A DNA stretch of 63,328 nucleotides, filler included, from Octopus bimaculoides (lineage: Eukaryota), in assembly GCF_001194135.2 (NCBI RefSeq). It is 5 parts of 4 records of this genome, joined end to end, with 100 filler letters (N's around TTAATTAATTAA, not from the genome) between each part and the next. Parts side by side here need not be neighbours in the genome. Positions count along the whole stretch, not along the records: positions 39,964 to 50,593 come from NC_068984.1; 4 more parts are not named here. One strand, 5' to 3'. Shown piece after piece: positions 39,964-50,830 of this stretch. A program made the translations under genes and the position numbers. Below the pieces are notes generated by a model. That model searched no databases. It had not been told where the DNA came from and saw only the letters and a program-made list of their open reading frames with translations. The stretch's first letter is position 1; every line of letters begins with the position of its first letter.

Positions 39964-40318
39964 TCAATACCAGCAGATGACAACGTTTCTCTAAAAGAAA
40001 TGGAAAAACTTTCAAAATACAAAGACCTGGAAATAGAGATAACTCGAATGTGGAATCTAAAAACAGAAACAATTCCTATCATAGTAGGTGCCTTAGGTAT
40101 AATAAAAAAATATTCAGACAAATACATAACAAAAACACCAGGACTTACAAATATATATAACATACAGAAAATTGCACTACTGGGCACTGCACACATTCTA
40201 CGCAAAACACTTTCAATACAGTAAACATAAGAGCACCACAGCAAACCACAGCACATACCCAAGGCGCACAGAGCTGCGCTCGGTAGTGAAGTGAAAGCAC
40301 GTTATAAAAATAAAACTA

Positions 40319-40349
<31 letters not shown>

Positions 40350-40350
40350 T
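39964..40350 (+). mobile_element. R4/Dong-like RLE non-LTR retrotransposon 3' end with 3' UTR and (TAA)n tail
   Basis: IPADDNVSLKEMEKLSKYKDLEIEITRMWNLKTETIPIIVGALG...IQKIALLGTAHILRKTL* is followed by the UTR and (AAT)n. Confidence 0.85.
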
Positions 40351-40354
40351 TTTC

Positions 40355-40545
40355 TAACATACAGAAAATAGCACTATTAGGCACTGCAGATGTCCTATGT
40401 AAAGCACTTTCAGTATAGTGAAAATAACAACATTACAACAAACCACAGCACACACCCAAGGCACACAGAGCTGCACTTGGTAGTGTAGTGAAAGCACTTG
40501 ATAAAAATAAGACTACCAAATAATGATAATAGTCATAATAATAAT
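40355..40545 (+). mobile_element. Second, older 5'-truncated copy of the same R4/Dong-like 3' end
   Basis: acatacagaaaatagcactattaggcactgca...aaaccacagcacacacccaaggcacacagagctgc... aligns to about 40158-40325. Confidence 0.85.
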
Positions 40546-41074
40546 AATGATCCTTTCTACTATAAGCACAATGCCTGAAATTTGGGGGGAGAGGGTAAGT
40601 TGATTACATCGACCCCAATGTGTAATTGGTACTTATTTAATTGACCCAGAAAGGATGAAAGGTAAAGTCGACCTCAGTGGAATCTGAACTCAGAATGCAA
40701 AGATGGACCAAATGCTGCAAAGCATTTTGCTTGGTGTGCTTAATGATAATAATAATGAAAAGAAGAATCTGGAGTATGGAAACTGTAAAGGTTATACCTC
40801 TAATAGCTGTGTATTAGGAACTGGCAGTAAATGATATAGACAAATGATTGACAGAGATTGGAATAGAATATCATGTAGAGCTTCAATGGAAAGTTTGCCT
40901 CTAAGGAAAGATTATCAGGAGGGTTTTGAGCACTTGAAAGATTATTGAAAGCTTTTCGAATAGTTAAGGCTACAGGTAGTAACCCACTACCCACATAAAT
41001 TCAGCCGGGAATAAGAACAAACCTGAATCAAATAATGATGATGATAATAATAACAATAATAACAACAACAATAA

Positions 41075-42515
41075 TAATTTCCTTAGTCTACAAAGAGCAA
41101 AGATGTGGTATGACCAAATCCTAGGAGTTATTGAGAATGAAGATCGCAAAATCCTGTGGGATGTGATGATTTGGTGTGACCATCAGATCGGACATTAGAA
41201 GCCTGATATTGATGTGGTGAACAAAAAAAATAACTTGCATGTTAATTGACATAGCAACAGGATCAAAGAGAAAGAAGGGAAGGTGAACAACTATCATGAT
41301 TTGAAGTGGGAAATATGCAGGTTGTGGGTGGGTGCGCTGAAAGTGTAGCTGCTAGAATAAGAATAGCCTGGGCAAAGTTTAGAGAGCTCTTACCTCTGCT
41401 GGCGACAAAGGGACTCTCACTCAGAGTAAAAGGCAGACTGTATGACGCATGCGTACGAACAGCCATGCTACATGGCAGTGAAACATGGGCTGTGACTGCT
41501 GAGGACATGCGTAAGCTTGCAAGGAATGAAGCCAGTATGCTCCGCTGGATGTGTAATGTCAATGTGCATACCCGTCAGAGTGTAAGTATCTTGAAAGAAA
41601 AGCTGAACATAAGAAGCATCAGTTGTGGTGTGCAAGAGAGATGATTGCGCTGGTTTGGACGTGGTNNNNNNNNNNNNNNNNNNNNNNNNNNNNNNNNNNN
41701 NNNNNNNNNNNNNNNNNNNNNNNNNNNNNNNNNNNNNNNNNNNNNNNNNNNNNNNNNNNNNNNNNNNNNNNNNNNNNNNNNNNNNNNNNNNNNNNNNNNN
41801 NNNNNNNNNNNNNNNNNNNNNNNNNNNNNNNNNNNNNNNNNNNNNNNNNNNNNNNNNNNNNNNNNNNNNNNNNNNNNNNNNNNNNNNNNNNNNNNNNNNN
41901 NNNNNNNNNNNNNNNNNNNNNNNNNNNNNNNNNNNNNNNNNNNNNNNNNNNNNNNNNNNNNNNNNNNNNNNNNNNNNNNNNNNNNNNNNNNNNCACATAA
42001 GATGTACCATCTTGAGCGTGACCATTGCCAGTACCGCCTGACTGGCCTTTGTAGGGTTTTCGAGCGAGATCGTTGCCAGTGCCCTGGACTGGCTCTTGTG
42101 CGGGTGGCACATAAAAGACACCATTTCGAGCGTGGCCGTTTTCGTGCGGGTAACACGTAAAAGCACCCACTACACTCTCTGAGTGGTTGGCGTTAGGAAG
42201 GGCATCCAGCTGTAGAAACTCTGCCAAATTAGATTGGAACCTGGTGTTGCCATCCGGTTTCACCAGTCCTCAGTCAAATCGTCCAACCCATGCTAGCATG
42301 GAAAGCGGACGTTAAACGATGATGATGATGATGAAGATGATGGGCCATAAAGAGAGTGGACGTTATACCAATAGTAACTGGCACACTTGGAAGTATCAAC
42401 ACTCAGCTACCAACACAATTGGAAAAGATTGGTACAAATGGGAAGATAGAACACCTACAAAAATCCCCATTGCTTGGAACTGCAAAAGTCCATCCTCCAC
42501 AGTTCTTGAAGCATG
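41075..42515 (+). mobile_element. R4/Dong-like RLE fragment split by an RTE insertion (parts 41075-41327 and 42341-42515)
   Basis: Left part: ENEDRKILWDVMIWCDHQI..KPDIDVV..CMLIDIA..KWEICRLW. Right part resumes AIKRVDVIPIVTGTLG..IEHLQKSPLLGTA. Confidence 0.75.
41328..42340 (+). mobile_element. 5'-truncated RTE-clade LINE with intact 3' UTR and (GAT)n tail
   Basis: GGCAESVAARIRIAWAKFRELLPLL..VKGRLYDACVRTAMLHGSETW..MLRWMC..LRWFG; 3' end catgctagcatggaaagcggacgttaaacgatgatgatg. Short copies of this tail also lie at about 14340(-), 44670-44860, 48330-48480, 48925-49060(-) and 49840-50050. Confidence 0.9.
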
Positions 42516-44934
42516 ATCAATAAACAAATGTCACCTTAGTCTACTGGTTGTGGACAGTCAACGCTTTCCATCATACCCAGCAAAATAAGCTGTGAGTTTT
42601 CATCAAACAATGTTTTCTTACATTGGTACAAAGCCCAAACTATATTTGGACAGAAAGAAGATGTAGTCAGCCTCACAAGTATCTTATTTCATCAAACTTT
42701 AAAGAATAAACGGCAAGGTTCACCCAAGTGGGATTTGAACTCAAGAAGTAAAGGGCCATAATAATCTCTAAATCTAGGCACAGGTCATACATTCTGGAGG
42801 ATGATGCAGTTGATTATCTCAGCTCCAGTACTTGACTGGTTTGTATTTTATTGATTCTGAAAGGATGAAAGAGAAAGTCACCACTTGAAAAACAAAGAAA
42901 AGCAAGTAAGGAAAGTAGGGAGATGATAGTTCACAAAATGATTGACATGAATGAGTCCTTTGAAGATAAAAAAATAGGGGCAAAATTATGAAAGGTAAGG
43001 GAAGGATCAATTGGATTTATCTCAGTGTTTAATCTTATATCTTCTACTTGTTTAGTCATTAGACTGTGGCCATGTTGGGGTATTGCTTTAAAGAATTTTT
43101 AGCTGAATGAATCTACCCCAGTGGTTATTCTTTTTCTTTTTAAGCCAAGTACTTATTTTATTGGTCTCTTTTGCTGAACTGTTAAATTATGGGAACATAA
43201 ACACACCAACACCAGTTACTGAGCAGTTGGCAGGGGAGGAGGAATGACACAAGGGCATACACACACACGCACGCACACACACACACACACACATGCACAT
43301 ATACACATATGATGGGCTTCTTTCATTTCCCGTCTATCAAATCTGCCTGCAAGGCTTTGGTCACCCCGAGCTTAGGATAGGAGACACCTACCCAACATGC
43401 CAAGCAGTGGGATTGAACCTGGAACTATGTGGTTGGGAAGCAAACTTCTTACCACACAGCCACATCCGCACCTATAAAAATTAGGTAAGGAATTACGTAA
43501 GTAGAAGATTATTCTATCGGCCCTGGATGGATTAAAGATTAAATGGCAGGATTTGAACTCATCATGTAGAAGGATGTGATGAAATATAGCATGGCAAGGT
43601 GTCTGACATTCAAGTGCTAACATTTCTGCCACCTCACTGCCTTAATCCTCTCTACTCTAGGTAAGAGGCTCAAAATTTGGGGAAAGGGGATGAGTCGATT
43701 ACATCGACTCCAGTACATAACTGGTACTTAATTTATCGACCTCCCACAAGGATGAAAAGCAAAGTTGGCCCCAGTGGCATTTGAACTCAGAACGTGAAGG
43801 CAGATGAAATACTGCTAAGCGTGTCGTCCGGCATGCTAATGATTCTGCCAGCTCACTGCCATGGCACTCATCAGACTTAACAAGAACAATAAAACAACAA
43901 CAATCCTTTCTTCCACAGACACAAGGCCTGAAATTATGGGGGAAGGAGGCTAATTGACATCATTAACCCCTAAACTTAACTGGTACTTACTTCATTGACC
44001 CCTGTCCAAAAGGATGAAAGGGAGTCAGCCTTGGCAGAGTTTGAAATCAGAATGTAAAGCCAGAAGAAATGGCACTAAACATTTTGTCCAGTCCCCTTTT
44101 AAGGGTAGGAAGGATTATCAGAAGGGTTTTGAGGACTTGAAAGATTATTGAAAGCTTGTGGATATCTAAGTTGACAAGTAGTAAATTCTACAAAGAATAA
44201 GAACAAACCTAAGTCAAATTGACTAATCATAATAATATCTAGTTGCAGCAGAAGGCTACATATTTTTGTAGGGAAGAGGTGGTATAAATTGGAGTGGGAT
44301 AATTCCTGCACTTGCCTTTTAGTTATGTTACTGATCCCTGAAGAATAAAAGGCAAACTCAACTCAGTGGGGTTTGAACATGGAACATAAAAGTATATGAT
44401 TGAAAACAAGTATTTTTTTTCCAGCAGTGTGATTCCTGTTGAAGTAAATTGAAATGATTCTGAGCACAGATTGAAACTAGATTATCATACTAGTTTCTTA
44501 AGAACTTATTGCTCACACACATATGCATGCACACATGCACACACACATATGCATGCACACATGCACACATACATACTCATACTCACACAATGAAATATAT
44601 CATAAAAAAAATAATGATAAGAACATAATTGAATACACATTTTGATATGTTTGAAAAAAAAAATGAATTAATTGTTGGCAAGTTCATGACTCTATGCCAC
44701 ATAAAAAGCACTAAGTCCACTCTGTTGAGAGGTTGGTATTAATCCAGCTGTAAAAATCCTGCCAAAACAGTCACAGAGGTCTGGTACAGGCTTTGGCCTG
44801 GCTGGATCTTGTGAAACTGTCCCACCCATGCTAGCATGGAAGGCGGACGTTAAACAATGATGATAAGTCTTGTGCATCATTCTGAATTTGAGATCTTTCA
44901 TTGTACAAACTATTTAGATGATGTCAAATGGCTG

Positions 44935-46350
44935 TTATAAATGAGGGCACAGTTTATTTTGGGCCTCTTTGACCATTTTGCTAAGAATAACAGGTGGAAT
45001 ATAAGTGTAAAAATATTTTTTTTCATACAGGTAATCAACATTTTGCCAACTAAGATATGTAAGGTTCCGCCAATGTGCCATGCTGCGGAAATGAAGATTG
45101 GTTGTTGGCCAGTAGCGGGGATAGAGTTCCAAAAGAGCAGCATGGTCTGGCAAAAAGAGGCTAAAAGATAAAGCAGCACCATGCATGCCAATCAAAATAT
45201 CAGTTGTGGAAATTAAAGTAAGTTGCTCCTTAACAGGGAGTTTATCAAGCTGTACCCCTCTTACAAGATGTCCTTTGAGAAGATTCTGAATCGTTACTGA
45301 TAGTTCATTTTCATTTTTTATTTTTCGAGTAATGAGCCCTGAAGGATTATGTATATGTGAAATATAGTCCCGGCGCCATATAAATAAAACTGAAAGGTTT
45401 TGACAGTTCAGATTCTTATAGTCTCGAATATGGTACTGTCCAAGAAAGAATTTTTTAAAATTAGACAAATATGAGACTAATGAATTTGTGTACATCCATA
45501 AGGGTGTCCAGTCATTCAGTATACTAAAGGCGATTTGAGATAATATTGGTGTTTTTCCACAAGGATAAAGAGGACTGTTGTAGCCCATAATACTCCAGAT
45601 TAGATTGTTATATGTAGTAGGCTCCTTGATGTCTTTAGCGAAGATAACATTGTTAAACAACTGGTACCATATGCTAATTAGTAGACCTTTAGGATGGTTA
45701 TCGAGAAGTAAAATATTTGTTTCAGCAGGTGTACTATTGAAAATCTTCATCATTAAAAAGGCATTGTAAAAATCAGTCATGGAATGAAAAAGATTTGCAT
45801 ATTCATAACGTTCAATAGCTATTGTAAGACGTGGTTCTATCTTTACAGTTTTGATAATGTCCGGCTGAAATTGAGTAACAGAAAACCATTTGTTAAGATG
45901 GTTATTTCCTCTAAACTCATATGATGGCTTTTTTTTACATTTTACAGAGAAATAGCCATCAGAAAAAACTATTTTTTTCGGTGCTGTCCACTGTTTGTCA
46001 GTAGTTTCCTGAACAAATTCAGCATTTTTAGACGGGTTCAAAACAATATTTTTGAAAAATGCAAACTCATTTCCATAGCCAACAAAAGAGCCATCACATG
46101 CAGATATATTTTGTTTTAGTAGAGACAAGATAGCATTTCCATTGCTGTCATAACCAAAACCTTTGTTCTGTCCAGAATATTGAGCAGATTTCTTTGCAAA
46201 ATCTACTATTGATGTCACATTTACCTGTAATAGAAGCCATAGTATGAAGAAAAGAAATAGAACACCTGCAAGGTTATGATGTTTGCGTCCGAAGTGTTTT
46301 GCAGCAATGCCGAAACATAACGCCTGAGAATATTTGTGGGACAATTTCAT
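44935..46350 (-). CDS. Glycosyltransferase family 61 protein, type II membrane, 471 aa, single coding exon; plant beta-1,2-xylosyltransferase-like motifs
   Basis: Uninterrupted ORF. The track's start at 46446 lies in an intronic polypyrimidine tract; a strong acceptor (ttttttttattatttcag) at 46373 precedes the ATG at 46350. TM segment LAGVLFLFFILWLLL. GT61 motifs: ERYEYANLFHSMTDFYNAF, ILLLDNH, FIWRRDYISH..P.G...RKIKNENE, EQLTLISTTDILIGMHGAAL, LLELYP, HFRSMAHWRNLTY. Confidence 0.92.
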   Translation of the reverse strand: MKLSHKYSQALCFGIAAKHFGRKHHNLAGVLFLFFILWLLLQVNVTSIVDFAKKSAQYSGQNKGFGYDSNGNAILSLLKQNISACDGSFVGYGNEFAFFKNIVLNPSKNAEFVQETTDKQWTAPKKIVFSDGYFSVKCKKKPSYEFRGNNHLNKWFSVTQFQPDIIKTVKIEPRLTIAIERYEYANLFHSMTDFYNAFLMMKIFNSTPAETNILLLDNHPKGLLISIWYQLFNNVIFAKDIKEPTTYNNLIWSIMGYNSPLYPCGKTPILSQIAFSILNDWTPLWMYTNSLVSYLSNFKKFFLGQYHIRDYKNLNCQNLSVLFIWRRDYISHIHNPSGLITRKIKNENELSVTIQNLLKGHLVRGVQLDKLPVKEQLTLISTTDILIGMHGAALSFSLFLPDHAALLELYPRYWPTTNLHFRSMAHWRNLTYLSWQNVDYLYEKKYFYTYIPPVILSKMVKEAQNKLCPHL

Positions 46351-47683
46351 TAGAATTCTCTCAATTGGATCACTGAAATAATAAAAAAAAAAGAAAAGAT
46401 AAAGAAAAGTTAAATTGTAAATATATAAAGAGATTAAGAGAAGCAATGATATTTATGCATCAATTTTTCTTGTTCTATTAATTAAGCAAACACTTACCAA
46501 CCACTTAAACATACAAAGTAGATAATATATTGATAATTAATCATATCAATGAGTAGAATATAAATATAGTAATAGAATATAATCGAAGTCTGGCTCTTGT
46601 AGGAGTGGTTTGCAAAAAAGAAAAAAAAAAAACTTTCCAAACCTTTCCAATCTGATAAGATTAAATAAGCAATACATTGATGTTACTGAATGTAGTATAA
46701 AAGCTTAAAACAGGAAATAATAGAATCACCTGCAAAAACGAAAATTAAAAAAAAAAAATTCATGCAACAGTGTTCATTGACCCCCGCAAAAAGATGAAAG
46801 GCAATGCCAACCTTTGCAGCATTTGACTCAGACCGAAATGTCAGAAGAAATGTCACTGTACATTTTGTCTGGTTATAGAAGAACATTAGCTGACAAGAGT
46901 AGTCAGTATAGAAATGGTGTAGTTCCAGTGCTTTAGTTAAAATACCAAAACGTTTATTGTGTAAGGCAATGATATAAAGATAGGAGAGGCTACAATGGCA
47001 AGTAATACTTGGGTTTAGAGATGAAGATGCATGGCCTAGTGATTAGTGTGGTGCACTCACAATTGAGAGATCATGGTTTCAATTCCTGGACTGGCTGTAT
47101 GTTGCATTGTATGTTTCTCTTGGAAACTTGTGCATTAAAACTGCTTGGAAATTTCATCGTTGTAATTCCTCTCTGTTAACTCAGCTTTCAAACTTATGTT
47201 TAACTAGCCTAAAAGCTGTACTCAGTGTGGACTTTTGAGCCAGCTCCTGTGGAGGGCTAATTGGGTCTGCAGCCCAAAACTAAGAGAGCTAAATAGCATG
47301 ACTATAATACGCCTATAATGACTATATGCTCCAGTGGTGTTTGACCAGAGGTTAAGGTCTGACAAGAATTAATTTTGTAATGCAATCATTCTATTGTTCC
47401 AGTCCCAAGTTGAATTCCAACTGTTGGCCAATTTGTCTTAAAGTTCTCATCTCAATGTAAAATTAATGAAGTAAATGTCATTTATCTCCCCACTGATCTC
47501 TGACGTCATCTGAGAAATGCCAACAAAGATGGCACGAATCAGCCAAGCTTTACCTGCTAGAAATAGCAACCCAAATGCTTTTAAATCAGATTTCAATGTT
47601 GGCTGTTCAAGAACCAAATGTAAAATAGATTTTCAATCCTGGGATCATCCTGATTCCAAAAAGGTATAATATGTCTATTCAGA

Positions 47684-47837
47684 CAGGGCCAACTCAAGGT
47701 ACTGGCAACTCAGGCAGTCACCTGGGGTGCCATGTGCTAGAGGGCATGACAAAGATAATTAAATTTCCATGACCGTCAGGTTGTACACGCTGAACTTCAG
47801 CTTGCCTGGGGCACCAGCAACCTTAGGGCCGGCCCTG
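47684..47837. mobile_element. hAT-type MITE, 154 bp
   Basis: Termini are CAGGGCCAACTCAAGGT and the reverse complement CAGGGCCGGCCCTAAGGT. The flanking 8-mers tattcaga and tatgtaga match at 6/8, consistent with a decayed 8-bp TSD. Confidence 0.65.
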
Positions 47838-49230
47838 TATGTAGAGCAGATGTAGACTGAGATACTGGGGTCCCAGAATTTCACTTCTATTTATTATAGA
47901 AGAAATAACAGTTGTCATGATAGTGGTGAAACATCAATAGCATCATAACGACTCACTCAGTCACTTCTCTTAAGATTAAAGGCTGTTTTTATTCCTCACT
48001 GATTAGACCCTTGTGTCTGCGTGTCTGTGAATATATGTATGTATGTATATATATGCATGTATGTGTGTGTGTTTGTCTCTCCTTGTCTTGACATCATGTG
48101 ATGGTTGTAAATGAATGTCACCATCATACAAGCAGTGTTGTTCATTTCCAATCTTCCATGAAAATCATGTCCAGGGGTGGGGGAGAGAGAGGGAGATGGG
48201 AGAGAGAGATGACAGAGAAAGGGAAAGAGAGAAAGATAGAGAGGGGATGGGAAAGAAAAGGGGAGAGAGAGAGATGGGAGAGAAAGAGAGAAACACTGCA
48301 ATTTATTAAATGAGCACAGTTGACATAAACACTTTCCCATCCCCTCAGACACAGAAAGCAAGAGAGTGGTGTCAACAAGAAAGGTATCCAACCATAGAAA
48401 ATCTACCTCAATGAATTCCATCTGACCCATGCAAGCATGGAAAAAAGGGGGTGTTGAAATGATGATGATGATGAAGATGATGATAAAAAAGTAGATAAAC
48501 TTTCCAACAAGAAAGATGGTATCTTGTTTATTGTAGATAATGAGCTCGGTGACATCCTGATAACATAAGTTGCAATTAAAATGTCATAAGTCAACCCTTG
48601 TACATTTGATGCTTTGCTGGAAATTGACATATATACAATGTATATTTTAATAACAATTATGCACAATCTTGGGATTTCTGGTATGAAAAGAATAACTATC
48701 TTTATGGGGGAAAATGTCTAAATGTCAGAGAAGTTTAGATTATTAATAACGATTAAAAAAAACAAAACAACTCAAAACAAATCAACTCTGAATTTCTATG
48801 AAGCTTTCAACTTGGGATTCATAACTATATGGGATAGGCTGTTGTTTAGCCCAAGGTCAGTACTGACTGAGCAGACCTATGATCAAAGTTTTGATGTTTT
48901 CTATATTCAGTGTATTGTTTCATCATCATCAGCATCATCGTTTAACGTCCGCTTTCCATGCTAGCATGGGTTGGACGATTTGACAGAGGACTGTTGAACC
49001 GAATGGCTACACCAGGCTCCATTCTGATCTGGCGGAGTTTCTACAGCTGGATGCCCTTATAATTCGAAAGTGATTTGGTTGTTATTTTTAGCAAGTTGAG
49101 TGTCTGAGTAAATGTTCCCATTAAGTGTGAGTATTGTTTAGCCACGGGTCATCCTTATTTGAAAAGACCTTTGATGAAAGGCAGTCAAAATGATGACCAT
49201 CTTACCATTTTATTTTCCACAAACAAGGTG

Positions 49231-49426
49231 TGAGGGGGTGTTGAAAAGTTCCTGGCTTTAAGGCTATCGTGAAAGGCCTGGCTGGAGGCCCAATCTTCGA
49301 AGTTCTTTTACAGGGCTTAGAAAAACTGAAGGACCGCTGCAATAAGTGTGTGAATCTGAGAGGGGAATATGTAGAACAAAATCACAATTATCTGACCCTT
49401 CTGTATCTTTTTTTTTTACACAAAGC
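49231..49426 (+). mobile_element. Mariner-derived MITE (copy 2), right TIR cut by a SINE B fragment
   Basis: Begins gagggggtgttgaaaagttcctggcttt; homologous to 12204-12396. Confidence 0.75.
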
Positions 49427-50154
49427 ATAGGAGTGGTTGTGTGGTAAGTAGCTTGCTTACCAAGCACATGGTTCCGGGTTCAGAGTATGCCTTAGCACAT
49501 CTTCCTCATCTTCCCTCCTTTTCCAACTGAGATAGCCATATCTCTCTACTGCAAGACACTTGTTTCTGTTGCCTCAGTCATATTTTAACCCCTCATCACC
49601 TTGCATAAAGCTGATTCCTTTAACATTTTAACATTCAGTTCGGTCACATCTGGCCTAAATAGTCTACCCATTTTATGTCCAAACTGCCCAGATCTGGCTT
49701 TGCACACCTACCCTACAGGGTCATTCTAAAACTAAACAATCACATCATCAAAGCTTTGAGATAATACCCGATTAATTCAAAGCAATGCATTTGACAAAGT
49801 AATCTGAATGCTAAAGAATTAATACTACCCCCACTATCAGCTGAGTGGGGGTCTTGTTTCGCAAGTTACATGGTGACCTCACTTGTGCCAGTGCCATGTA
49901 AAAAGTATCCAGTGCACTGTGGTTGGTGTTGGAGAGAACATCTGGCTACAGAAACCTTGCCAAAGCAGACACTGGAGCTTAGATCAGTCCTCTAGCTCAC
50001 CAGTTCCTGTCAAATCATCCAACCCATGCCAGCATGGAAAACAAGTTAAGAGGTAATGATGACAATGATGAAATTATTCCAAGAGTAGTAATGAGAAATA
50101 GAAAGTATCTAATCAATGAGATGATGTAGAGTATGTACATTACTTTAATCAACG

Positions 50155-50550
50155 TATTGTTGTTGTTGGCACTCCGTCGCTTACGACATTGAGGGTTCCT
50201 GTTGATCCGATCAACGGAACAGCCTGCTCGTGAAATTAACGTGCAAGTGACTGAGCACTCCACAGACACGTGTACCCTTAATGTAGTTCTCGGAGATATT
50301 CAGCGTGGCACAGTGTGACAAGGCTGGCCCTTTGAATTAGAGGCACAACAACAGAAACAGGAAGAAAGAGTGAGAGAAAGTTGTGGTGAAAGAGTACAGC
50401 AGGGTTTGCCACCATCTCCTGCTGGAGCCTCGTGGAGCTTTAGGTGTTTTCGCTCAATAAACACTAACAACGCCCGGTCTGGGAATCGAAACTGCGATCC
50501 TATGACTGCGAGTCCACTGCCCTAACCACTGGGCCATTGCGCCTCCACAC
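50155..50550 (-). mobile_element. tRNA-derived SINE (family C-related)
   Basis: Minus strand GTGGAGGCGCAATGGCCCAGTGGTTAGGGCAGTGGACTCGCAGTC...GCAGTTTCGATTCCCAG tRNA-like head, central block shared with the 35945 copy, (CAA)n tail. Confidence 0.8.
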
Positions 50551-50830
50551 TTTAATCAACAGTGAGTGTCAATACAACCATGTGCAAAATTATNNNNNNN
50601 NNNNNNNNNNNNNNNNNNNNNNNNNNNNNNNNNNNNNTTAATTAATTAANNNNNNNNNNNNNNNNNNNNNNNNNNNNNNNNNNNNNNNNNNNNATGACGG
50701 AGGCCCTCCGAGGAAAGACTTTTCTCCTCCGTTTTATGAGGGCCTCGTCATAGAGACCTCACGAGCCCCAAATGAAATAGAATGAGATGGGCTATCACCA
50801 ATCTCCAGCAGAGGTAAATAATTTTTCTTC

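What the first reader, a model, noticed from the sequence alone, without database searches (positions are those of the whole stretch)
44935..46350. Animal GT61 with plant beta-1,2-xylosyltransferase-type motifs: candidate for the unidentified molluscan core xylosyltransferase
Seen: an intact 471-aa type II membrane GT61 ORF. Recalled knowledge: Arabidopsis XYLT carries R-F-E-Y-A-N-L-F-H-T-V-T-D-W-Y-S-A-Y, then V-F-V-D-G-H and R-E-D-Y-L-A-H-P-R. This protein has RYEYANLFHSMTDFYNAF, ILLLDNH and RRDYISH, whereas animal EOGT has a different motif here (N-M-Y-H-H-F-C-D-F). Core beta-1,2-xylose occurs on gastropod and schistosome N-glycans, and to my knowledge the animal gene has not been functionally demonstrated. 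Inference: this may be a member of that enzyme class, or a related xylosyl/pentosyltransferase, in a cephalopod where such xylosylation is not well documented.
Basis: partly seen in the sequence, partly recalled or inferred. Interest (0 to 1): 0.8.

Follow-up and report, generated by a model that had tools for sequence, protein, structure and literature searches.

The report
Octopus plant-type xylosyltransferase-like gene
This is an intact Octopus bimaculoides gene for a Golgi sugar-adding enzyme whose nearest characterised relative is the plant enzyme that puts xylose on protein N-glycans, but databases already label it that way and it is a modified side-copy rather than the best candidate for the unidentified animal enzyme.

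Summary
The source is Octopus bimaculoides chromosome CM046604.1.

The phylogenetic prediction also holds. The lophotrochozoan clade containing this protein pairs with plant core beta-1,2-xylosyltransferase (XYLT), not with EOGT, POMGNT2 or plant MUCI21/XYXT1-type GT61 (NJ bootstrap 92-94%). Profile-profile scores are 322 against plant XYLT and 173, 91 and 79 against the other three. The UDP-binding and catalytic residues are present, and dN/dS against Argonauta is 0.18.

Three things lower the claim:
- RefSeq already names the O. sinensis and Argonauta orthologs 'beta-1,2-xylosyltransferase RCN11-like', and a 2014 paper flagged such worm and mollusc genes.
- The family is very large and multi-copy in molluscs, annelids, nemerteans and brachiopods.
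- This gene belongs to a cephalopod-specific derived paralog. That paralog has lost an N-lobe 'GGE...acidic' motif and the 'AHPR' motif, both shared by plant XYLT and most animal members. A second cephalopod paralog (LOC106875510) keeps both.

It is most likely an active UDP-pentose (xylose) transferase with a shifted acceptor. Its activity is untested.

The parts
44935..46350 (-). Complete single-exon CDS of 471 aa plus stop: a GT61 glycosyltransferase of the XYLT-like subfamily, cephalopod paralog A
   Evidence: ORF. Pfam GT61. 100% match to a called gene on O. bimaculoides CM046604.1. 72% identical full-length ortholog in Argonauta hians, also single-exon. dN/dS 0.18.
46216..46272 (-). Signal-anchor transmembrane segment (about residues 27-45) after a basic cytoplasmic tail, giving a type II topology
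   Evidence: The only Kyte-Doolittle peak above 1.6 is centred on residues 33-43. AF2 predicts a helix at 25-42.
45961..46035 (-). N-lobe loop (about residues 106-130). The family motif G-[KR]-x-GGE-x-[IL]-x-x-V...E-x-x-E-[YL], shared by plant XYLT and most animal members, is degenerate here
   Evidence: GGE is present in 52/60 other animal members and 7/8 plant XYLT, but in 0/4 of cephalopod clade A. Alignment. Deviations at positions 116, 122 and 125. pLDDT is low here.
45772..45810 (-). R181-YEYANLFHSMTD193. It contains the GT61 NxxHxxxD motif: N186 (UDP phosphate contact), H189 (proposed catalytic base) and D193
   Evidence: Aligned to EOGT N245/H248 and POMGNT2 N163/H166. Residue roles are from PMC13123520 and the SbXAT preprint. 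Conserved in 97-100% of the family.
45481..45567 (-). Insertion specific to cephalopod clade A (about residues 262-290, GKTPILSQIAFSILNDWTPLWMYTN), absent from other animal members
   Evidence: Alignment. Strongly constrained between Octopus and Argonauta, with omega 0.06 for codons 265-300. Low model confidence, pLDDT 53-64.
45313..45375 (-). R326...R342-xxx-N346: the two UDP-phosphate arginines, separated by the XYLT-type inserted loop (RDYISHIHNPSGLIT). The clade-wide AHPR is changed to SHIH
   Evidence: R326 aligns to EOGT R372 and R342 to EOGT R377 (roles). The loop is present in plant XYLT and the animal clade only, and is absent in EOGT, POMGNT2 and plant clade B. P333I and R334H occur where P is 99% and R 88% conserved.
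45163..45225 (-). Q376 and H390-GAALSF396: C-lobe uridine and donor contacts (the HGAxxT motif), with octopod-specific G393A and H396F
   Evidence: Q376 aligns to EOGT Q412, H390 to the HGA histidine and position 396 to EOGT H432. G393 is 100% and H396 90% conserved in the other members. The oyster P0241 also has F at 396.
45088..45093 (-). H420-F421 pair at the position aligned to the donor-sugar determinant of plant GT61 (SbXAT F596 / SbXXT Y462). It is shared with plant XYLT
   Evidence: 'HF' occurs in plant XYLT and the animal clade, against 'YY' in plant clade B, 'CY' in EOGT and 'PY' in POMGNT2. The determinant is described. The mapping to SbXAT is by spacing and alignment, so it is inferred.
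46373..46398 (-). Polypyrimidine tract plus AG, a putative 3' splice acceptor 22 nt upstream of the ATG. It implies an upstream non-coding (or alternative) 5' exon
   Evidence: Sequence. The same TATTTCAG|TGA(T/C)CC is conserved in Argonauta, where nucleotide similarity starts at -39 and stops at the stop codon. The O. vulgaris model P0372 joins an upstream exon at this point. No transcript evidence was obtained.

Best explanation
The gene encodes an active, Golgi-type (type II membrane) inverting GT-B glycosyltransferase of family GT61. It belongs to the lophotrochozoan subfamily that is sister to plant core beta-1,2-xylosyltransferase.

Proposed mechanism:
- UDP is held by N186, R326 and R342 (the N-R-R constellation), with Q376 and the HGA loop.
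- H189 of NxxHxxxD acts as the general base.
- The donor is most likely UDP-xylose. This is inferred from the only characterised relatives and from the shared 'HF' donor-pocket pair.
- The sugar is transferred in beta linkage onto a glycan of secretory-pathway glycoproteins.

This copy is a cephalopod-specific derived paralog. It has a degenerate N-lobe GGE/acidic loop, AHPR changed to SHIH in the loop between the two arginines, and a new constrained 25-30 aa insertion. Its acceptor specificity has therefore probably shifted away from the canonical core beta-mannose site, or narrowed. The unmodified paralog B (LOC106875510) is the likelier canonical enzyme.

Shown: family and clade membership, intact catalytic residues, purifying selection and paralogy. 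Inferred: donor, linkage, acceptor and Golgi location.
For: - Family and fold: Pfam GT61. The AF2 model has pLDDT 85 and pTM 0.82. The top 16 PDB fold matches are all POMGNT2, E 4e-16 to 4e-14.
- Clade membership: animal clade plus plant XYLT has 94% NJ bootstrap against EOGT/POMGNT2, and 92% once plant MUCI21/XYXT1-type proteins are added. hhalign of the animal profile scores 322 against plant XYLT (E 7e-43, 324 columns), 173 against EOGT, 91 against POMGNT2 and 79 against plant clade B. Plant XYLT's best partner is likewise the animal clade.
- Shared derived features with plant XYLT: the R[FY]EYxNxxHxxTD[WF]Y block, the [IV]DxH block, the 11-15 aa DYxxH loop between the two arginines, and HF at 420-421.
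- Catalytic residues: all universally invariant residues are kept (R181, E183, W228, R326, Y329, N346, E347, Q376, H390, G391, A392, E408, H420, W427). The N-R-R triad and NxxHxxxD are intact.
- Selection: dN/dS 0.18 overall and 0.06 in the clade-specific insertion. Intact orthologs exist in O. sinensis, another Octopus species and Argonauta, and two further homologs (57% and 53% identical; source species not identified) fall in the same clade at 100% bootstrap.
- Derived status: 12-13 deviations at 76 family-conserved columns, the most among the animal members, where most of the rest show 6 or fewer. GGE is lost in 4/4 clade A members but kept in paralog B. Clade A has 100% bootstrap and is separate from paralog B.
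Against: - No biochemical data exist for any animal member of this clade, so the donor and acceptor are extrapolated across about 23-26% identity to plant XYLT.
- G393A sits in a column that is otherwise 100% Gly, next to the HGA histidine, and could impair donor binding.
- The F/Y donor rule from plant xylan GT61s does not transfer cleanly. The proven UDP-Xyl user AtXYLT has F at the position where xylan xylosyltransferases have Y.
- The backbone of the animal tree is unresolved (bootstrap below 50), so orthology to any particular mollusc gene is unknown.
- The trees are NJ only, and no algal or protist GT61 was sampled.
- No expression evidence was obtained.
Confidence: 0.55

Rival explanations
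1. One reading: this gene is the cephalopod core N-glycan beta-1,2-xylosyltransferase, functionally equivalent to plant XYLT. It would act on GlcNAc-bearing N-glycan cores.
For: It falls in the clade that is sister to plant XYLT. The catalytic residues are intact and the HF pair is shared with AtXYLT. It has type II topology. Core beta-1,2-xylose is a real molluscan feature, found in gastropods and in 42% of C. gigas N-glycans (PMC8699351, PMC10301044).
Against: The N-lobe GGE/acidic motif and the AHPR motif, conserved from plants to most animal members, are lost here but kept in the second cephalopod paralog. The family has many paralogs per species, so most members cannot all be the core enzyme. 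The cephalopod N-glycans described in the reviews read (rhodopsin) carry difucosyl/GalFuc cores with no xylose reported. PMC9300197 states that core xylose seems restricted within Mollusca.
Confidence: 0.2
2. It is an active GT61 enzyme that uses a different donor (UDP-GlcNAc as in EOGT/POMGNT2, UDP-arabinose or another sugar), and so makes a non-xylose modification.
For: GT61 spans GlcNAc, Xyl and Araf donors, and a single residue can switch Araf and Xyl. EOGT is the second-closest profile, with score 173. Octopod-specific changes G393A and H396F lie beside the donor-binding HGA loop. F at 421 matches the arabinosyltransferase state in plant xylan enzymes.
Against: The same HF pair occurs in AtXYLT, a proven UDP-Xyl enzyme. 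Overall the clade is much closer to XYLT than to any GlcNAc transferase. UDP-Araf use is not known in animals (general knowledge).
Confidence: 0.2
3. It is catalytically dead or decaying: a pseudoenzyme or young pseudogene kept by chance or for a non-catalytic role.
For: It has the highest number of deviations at conserved columns among the animal members, including the otherwise invariant G393. The O. vulgaris gene models stop at about residue 275.
Against: dN/dS is 0.18 with dS about 1. Full-length intact ORFs exist in O. bimaculoides, O. sinensis, a third Octopus species and Argonauta. Every UDP-contact and candidate catalytic residue is retained.
Confidence: 0.05

Closest known systems
Plant core beta-1,2-xylosyltransferase (XYLT; Arabidopsis At5g55500 = P0121, rice RCN11; GT61 clade C; EC 2.4.2.38)
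   Same: Type II membrane GT61. Shares the R[FY]EYANLFHxxTD[WF]Y block, the [IV]DxH block, the inserted DYxxH loop between the two UDP-binding arginines, HF at the donor-pocket position and the N-terminal C-[ED]-G motif. The two are reciprocal best profile matches (score 322) and form a clade at 92-94% bootstrap.
   Different: Only 23-26% identity over about 270 residues. AHPR is changed to SHIH and the GGE/acidic N-lobe loop is degenerate. There is an extra 25-30 aa insertion after GYNSPL, plus G393A and H396F. Activity is untested.
Canonical lophotrochozoan XYLT-like proteins, including cephalopod paralog B (P0035 / LOC106875510), Haliotis, Gigantopelta, Physella, Bulinus, Crassostrea, Lingula, Owenia and Lineus members; also the Schistosoma candidates Sjp_0055390 / Smp_125150 of PMC4122909
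   Same: Same subfamily at 35-48% identity, the same single-coding-exon structure where checked, and the same catalytic motifs.
   Different: They keep the GGE...acidic loop and AHPR and lack the clade A insertion. None has been characterised either. The schistosome sequences were not retrieved here.
EOGT (EGF-domain O-GlcNAc transferase, PDB 9wjk)
   Same: GT61 GT-B fold, N-R-R triad, NxxHxxxD, Q412-equivalent and HGAG loop.
   Different: EOGT is a soluble ER protein with C-terminal HDEL and no N-terminal anchor. It lacks the loop between the arginines and has CY instead of HF. Its profile score is about half that of XYLT. UniRef's 'EOGT' label on many family members is a family-level name, not orthology.
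POMGNT2 (PDB 6xfi, 7e9j, 8kb7)
   Same: Best structural match available in the PDB fold library (E 4e-16). Shares the UDP-contact residues.
   Different: 14-16% identity. POMGNT2 has a C-terminal FnIII domain and an RxxxR spacing without the XYLT loop. The sequence match is limited to the C-lobe.
Plant xylan-modifying GT61 (clades A/B: XAT, XYXT1, MUCI21)
   Same: Pentosyl transferases of the same CAZy family with the same core motifs.
   Different: The most distant group in profile comparison (score 79). They have GGYxGNxYHEFND and YY motifs and no XYLT loop.

Membership tests
CAZy GT61 / Pfam PF04577 | Significant match to the GT61 profile above the curated cut-off | tested here: met
   PF04577 at 40.2 bits against a cut-off of 27, E 4.8e-10.
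CAZy GT61 / Pfam PF04577 | GT-B fold resembling solved GT61 structures | tested here: met
   AF2 pLDDT 85 and pTM 0.82. The top 16 PDB matches are all POMGNT2, E 4e-16 to 4e-14, TM about 0.47.
CAZy GT61 / Pfam PF04577 | N-R-R constellation for UDP phosphates (EOGT N245/R372/R377; PMC13123520) | tested here: met
   N186, R326 and R342 align to these residues.
CAZy GT61 / Pfam PF04577 | NxxHxxxD and HGAxxT motifs (SbXAT preprint) | tested here: met
   N186-L-F-H189-S-M-T-D193 is exact. H390-G-A-A-L-S keeps H-G-A, with T changed to S and the following Gly changed to Ala.
Core beta-1,2-xylosyltransferase clade (plant GT61 clade C and its animal sister group) | Groups with characterised plant XYLT rather than other GT61 lineages | tested here: met
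   NJ bootstrap 94% and 92%. hhalign 322 against 173, 91 and 79. NJ only; no algal or protist sequences were included.
Core beta-1,2-xylosyltransferase clade (plant GT61 clade C and its animal sister group) | R[FY]EYxNxxHxxTD[WFY]Y block and an inserted loop between the two arginines | tested here: met
   RYEYANLFHSMTDFY at 181-195. A 15-residue loop lies between R326 and R342.
Canonical XYLT ortholog (conserved features derived here from 60 animal and 8 plant sequences; not a published definition) | A-H-P-R in the inter-arginine loop (P 99%, R 88% conserved) | tested here: not met
   The query has S-H-I-H, Argonauta A has S-H-V-H, and the two other clade A homologs have A-H-K/V-G. Paralog B keeps AHPR.
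Canonical XYLT ortholog (conserved features derived here from 60 animal and 8 plant sequences; not a published definition) | N-lobe G-[KR]-x-GGE...V...E-x-x-E-[YL] motif | tested here: not met
   Absent in all 4 clade A proteins. Present in 52/60 other animal members, 7/8 plant XYLT and paralog B.
Core beta-1,2-xylosyltransferase (enzyme activity, EC 2.4.2.38) | Transfers Xyl from UDP-Xyl in beta-1,2 linkage to the core beta-mannose of GlcNAc-bearing N-glycans | not testable with these tools
   This needs a recombinant enzyme assay. No animal member has been characterised in the held literature.
Core beta-1,2-xylosyltransferase (enzyme activity, EC 2.4.2.38) | Type II Golgi membrane topology | tested here: met
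   Single N-terminal hydrophobic anchor at 27-45 and no C-terminal KDEL/HDEL. Golgi residence itself is inferred.
EOGT | Orthology to EOGT, soluble ER protein with C-terminal HDEL, NMYHHFCDF motif | tested here: not met
   Animal clade plus EOGT has 1% bootstrap. The query ends in CPHL and has an N-terminal anchor. The motif differs.
POMGNT2 | Orthology to POMGNT2, with a C-terminal fibronectin type III domain | tested here: not met
   0% bootstrap with POMGNT2. The sequence match covers the C-lobe only. The protein ends about 30 residues after the catalytic domain.

The most novel reading that the evidence does not exclude
The cephalopod-specific paralog has a rebuilt acceptor-side loop, a new constrained insertion and altered residues beside the donor pocket. 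It may have acquired a new specificity and make a glycan modification not yet described in cephalopods, for example xylose (or another pentose) on a non-core position or on a non-N-glycan acceptor.

More broadly, the whole family may have an unusual origin in animals. Its coding sequence was intronless in the five genes checked, all named members found here are lophotrochozoan, and it is sister to plant XYLT. Ancient loss elsewhere and gene transfer are both not excluded.
Probability: 0.3. Interest if true: 0.55.

Novelty: new member of a known kind. Interest (0 to 1): 0.35.

Why it matters
Core beta-1,2-xylose on N-glycans is an immunodominant epitope shared by plants, snails, oysters and schistosomes. 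In the literature searched here, the animal enzyme that makes it has still not been cloned and assayed. This analysis confirms that the lophotrochozoan XYLT-like GT61 family is the right place to look. It also shows the family is large and heterogeneous, and it gives sequence criteria (GGE/acidic loop, AHPR loop, HF pair) for choosing which paralog to express first. For the octopus, those criteria point to paralog B (LOC106875510) rather than the gene in this window. The window gene is better suited as a test case of how acceptor or donor specificity diversified within the family.

Tried and rejected
- Protein comparison of the query against P0035 returned no real alignment, although the two are 40% identical. 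I replaced it with local BLASTP.
- I looked for transcript evidence in the Logan contigs carrying a near-identical protein (L003, L004). They are collinear with the genome through the putative acceptor and only 90% identical at nucleotide level. They are therefore genomic contigs of another Octopus species and say nothing about expression or splicing.
- Retrogene origin of this copy is rejected. The single-exon CDS is family-wide (Argonauta paralog B, Haliotis and Pecten), and a conserved splice acceptor precedes the ATG.
- Pseudogene status is rejected by dN/dS and by the intact orthologs.
- Contamination or recent transfer is rejected. CDS GC is 0.35 against 0.385 for the piece, the gene sits in a 148-Mb chromosome, and it is conserved across octopods.
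- A profile search of PDB sequences for a plant GT61 structure (SbXAT) found none.
- I considered using the F/Y donor-specificity rule of plant xylan GT61s to predict the donor. It is not transferable, because AtXYLT itself has F at that position.
- Orthology of clade A to the GGE-less bivalve and limpet paralogs was suggested by NJ but has under 45% support, and Pinctada shows the loop was lost more than once.
- The Rfam and tRNA scans of the piece found nothing relevant.
Full report
**Observation**

The piece (39964-50593) contains a 471-codon ATG-to-stop ORF at 44935-46350 on the minus strand. The stop-free frame is 503 codons long. With the local composition, the chance of that is about 1e-16. 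Pfam assigns GT61 (PF04577) above its curated cut-off.

The only strongly hydrophobic segment is at residues 27-45, behind a basic tail. This gives a type II signal anchor, and the structure model predicts a helix there.

**Source and gene structure**

The protein is encoded once, on Octopus bimaculoides chromosome CM046604.1. Argonauta hians has a 72% identical, full-length ortholog, also as a single coding exon.

Nucleotide similarity between the two species begins 39 nt upstream of the ATG and stops at the stop codon. Both carry a polypyrimidine tract plus CAG 22-25 nt before the ATG. An O. vulgaris gene model joins an upstream exon at exactly that point. I infer a spliced 5' leader exon, but I obtained no transcript evidence. 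The Logan contigs I checked are genomic and come from another Octopus species.

The single-exon CDS is not special to this copy. Argonauta paralog B, a Haliotis member and a Pecten member are all single-exon too.

**Is it functional?**

Nei-Gojobori dN/dS between Octopus and Argonauta is 0.18 (dS about 1.0). It is 0.06 in the clade-specific insertion. Intact orthologs also exist in O. sinensis and in a third Octopus species.

The AlphaFold model is confident (pLDDT 85, pTM 0.82). Its best solved-structure matches are all POMGNT2, the GT61 structure available in that library.

I mapped the residues shown experimentally to bind UDP in EOGT and POMGNT2 (PMC13123520) and the motifs defined on the sorghum XAT structure (preprint 10.1101/2025.07.18.665579). 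The results are:
- N186, R326 and R342 form the N-R-R triad.
- N186-xx-H189-xxx-D193 is an exact NxxHxxxD.
- Q376 matches EOGT Q412.
- H390-G-A is the HGA loop.
- All 15 columns that are invariant across 72 animal and plant sequences are kept.

I conclude that this is an active UDP-sugar glycosyltransferase. That conclusion rests on sequence alone.

**Which GT61?**

I obtained the sequences as follows:
- plant XYLTs;
- EOGT and POMGNT2 sequences verified against PDB chains;
- plant MUCI21/XYXT1/XAT3-like proteins.

NJ trees with 100-300 bootstraps put the animal clade with plant XYLT at 94%, and at 92% once plant clade B is included. Alternatives such as animal plus EOGT get 0-1%.

Profile-profile comparison agrees. 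The animal profile scores as follows:

| Compared with | hhalign score |
|---|---|
| plant XYLT | 322 (E 7e-43, 324 aligned columns reaching into the N-lobe) |
| EOGT | 173 |
| POMGNT2 | 91 |
| plant clade B | 79 |

Plant XYLT's best partner is likewise the animal clade.

Several derived characters are shared by plant XYLT and the animal clade only:
- the R[FY]EYxNxxHxxTD[WF]Y block;
- the [IV]DxH block;
- an 11-15 residue loop (DYxAHPRxxG) inserted between the two UDP-binding arginines;
- an H-F pair at the position that aligns with the donor-sugar determinant of plant xylan GT61s. EOGT, POMGNT2 and clade B have x-Y there.

So the refutation condition 'groups with EOGT/POMGNT2' is not met. 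Pairwise identity to plant XYLT is nevertheless only 23-26%.

Two limits apply to this result. The trees are distance-based only, and no algal or protist sequences could be sampled.

**What lowers the claim**

First, the homology is already public. RefSeq names the O. sinensis ortholog (XP_036357780.1) and the Argonauta ortholog 'beta-1,2-xylosyltransferase RCN11-like'. JGI labels metagenomic members 'glycoprotein 2-beta-D-xylosyltransferase'. Mickum et al. [quoted passage not shown]

Second, the family is very large. There are 1655 clusters (at 50% identity) with E<1e-3 and 245 with E<1e-30. Batillaria, Pinctada, Tegillarca, Lottia, Owenia and Gigantopelta each have several copies. Every named member I saw is a mollusc, annelid, nemertean or brachiopod.

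Third, cephalopods have at least two unlinked paralogs. Clade A comprises this gene, Argonauta P0002 and two homologs of unidentified source species, P0004 and P0005, and has 100% bootstrap. Paralog B is P0035, named LOC106875510. The two do not group together, and the backbone of the animal tree is unresolved.

**This copy is the derived one**

At 76 columns conserved in at least 85% of the other sequences, the octopus protein deviates at 12 and Argonauta A at 13. Those are the highest counts among the animal members, most of which show 6 or fewer. The notable changes are:
- P333I and R334H (AHPR to SHIH) inside the loop between the two arginines;
- G393A, in a column that is otherwise 100% Gly;
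- H396F. EOGT H432 contacts uridine at this position, and an oyster member also has F.

An N-lobe motif, G-[KR]-x-GGE-x-[IL]-x-x-V...E-x-x-E-[YL], is shared by plant XYLT (7/8) and most animal members (52/60), including heterobranch snails and paralog B. It is absent from all four clade A proteins.

Clade A also has a 25-30 residue insertion after GYNSPL that is strongly constrained.

In GT-B enzymes the N-lobe usually holds the acceptor (general knowledge; also stated in the SbXAT preprint). I therefore infer a shifted acceptor specificity. On the same grounds, paralog B is the better cephalopod candidate for the canonical core enzyme.

**Biological context from the literature**

Core beta-1,2-xylose is established in gastropods and schistosomes (PMC6935376, PMC8699351). 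It is abundant in oysters, at 42% of C. gigas N-glycans (PMC10301044).

The 2019 review states that xylosyltransferase activities have been detected in extracts, but that genes and recombinant enzymes exist only for the core fucosyltransferases. My later searches found no cloned animal enzyme. A 2024 paper reports that even GnT-I had only just been cloned from a mollusc. The library is incomplete, so this is not proof of absence.

For cephalopods, the reviews I read describe rhodopsin N-glycans with difucosyl/GalFuc cores and mention no xylose.

**Verdict**

This is a real, constrained and probably active GT61 glycosyltransferase of the XYLT-like lophotrochozoan family. The most likely donor is UDP-xylose. 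The acceptor is unknown and has probably diverged from the canonical one.

It is a new (derived, cephalopod-specific) member of a known and already annotated kind. This particular gene is neither the first nor the best handle on it.

Noticed in passing
window 46373-46398 (minus strand); L002 9962-10000: A polypyrimidine tract plus CAG lies just upstream of the ATG and is conserved between Octopus and Argonauta. The O. vulgaris model P0372 splices an upstream exon onto this point. This suggests a 5' exon outside the ORF.
   Followed up: partly
P0003 / P0372 (O. vulgaris CAI9721994.1, CAI9721993.1): Both O. vulgaris gene models for the ortholog end at about residue 275 with a divergent tail (…LSQIAFIPYSRL). 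O. sinensis, O. bimaculoides and a third Octopus species have intact 470-471 aa proteins. This could be a frameshift, an assembly error or a mis-model.
   Followed up: no
L007 2001-3569, L008 2001-3437, L009 2001-3242: Argonauta paralog B, a Haliotis member and a Pecten member all have a single-exon CDS. All named family members found are lophotrochozoan, while the sister group is plant XYLT. The origin of the animal family (ancient gene lost elsewhere, or transfer) is open.
   Followed up: partly
P0040, P0082, P0084, P0094, P0088, P0103, P0048, P0104 (alignment A1, query positions about 106-130): Pectinid, Pinctada, unionid and patellogastropod paralogs have deleted the roughly 27-residue GGE/acidic N-lobe loop altogether. 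There are therefore at least two structural types of this enzyme within molluscs.
   Followed up: partly
P0040, P0048, P0050, P0053, P0093, P0370 and others: [quoted passage not shown] The EOGT label conflicts with the phylogeny found here.
   Followed up: yes
window 41666-41993 and 41306-41644 (+): There is an assembly gap of 328 N. Next to it is a 112-aa ORF with no significant Pfam match (only a sub-threshold hit).
   Followed up: partly
window 40158-40546: A 197-bp unit is repeated twice in tandem at 83% identity.
   Followed up: no
window 44506-44578 (minus strand): A CA/TG-rich microsatellite lies about 360 bp downstream of the stop codon. It gives a sub-threshold Rfam mir-297 hit (45.6 bits against a gathering score of 90), which is most likely a low-complexity artefact.
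   Followed up: partly
window 48180-48291: A GA-rich low-complexity tract.
   Followed up: no
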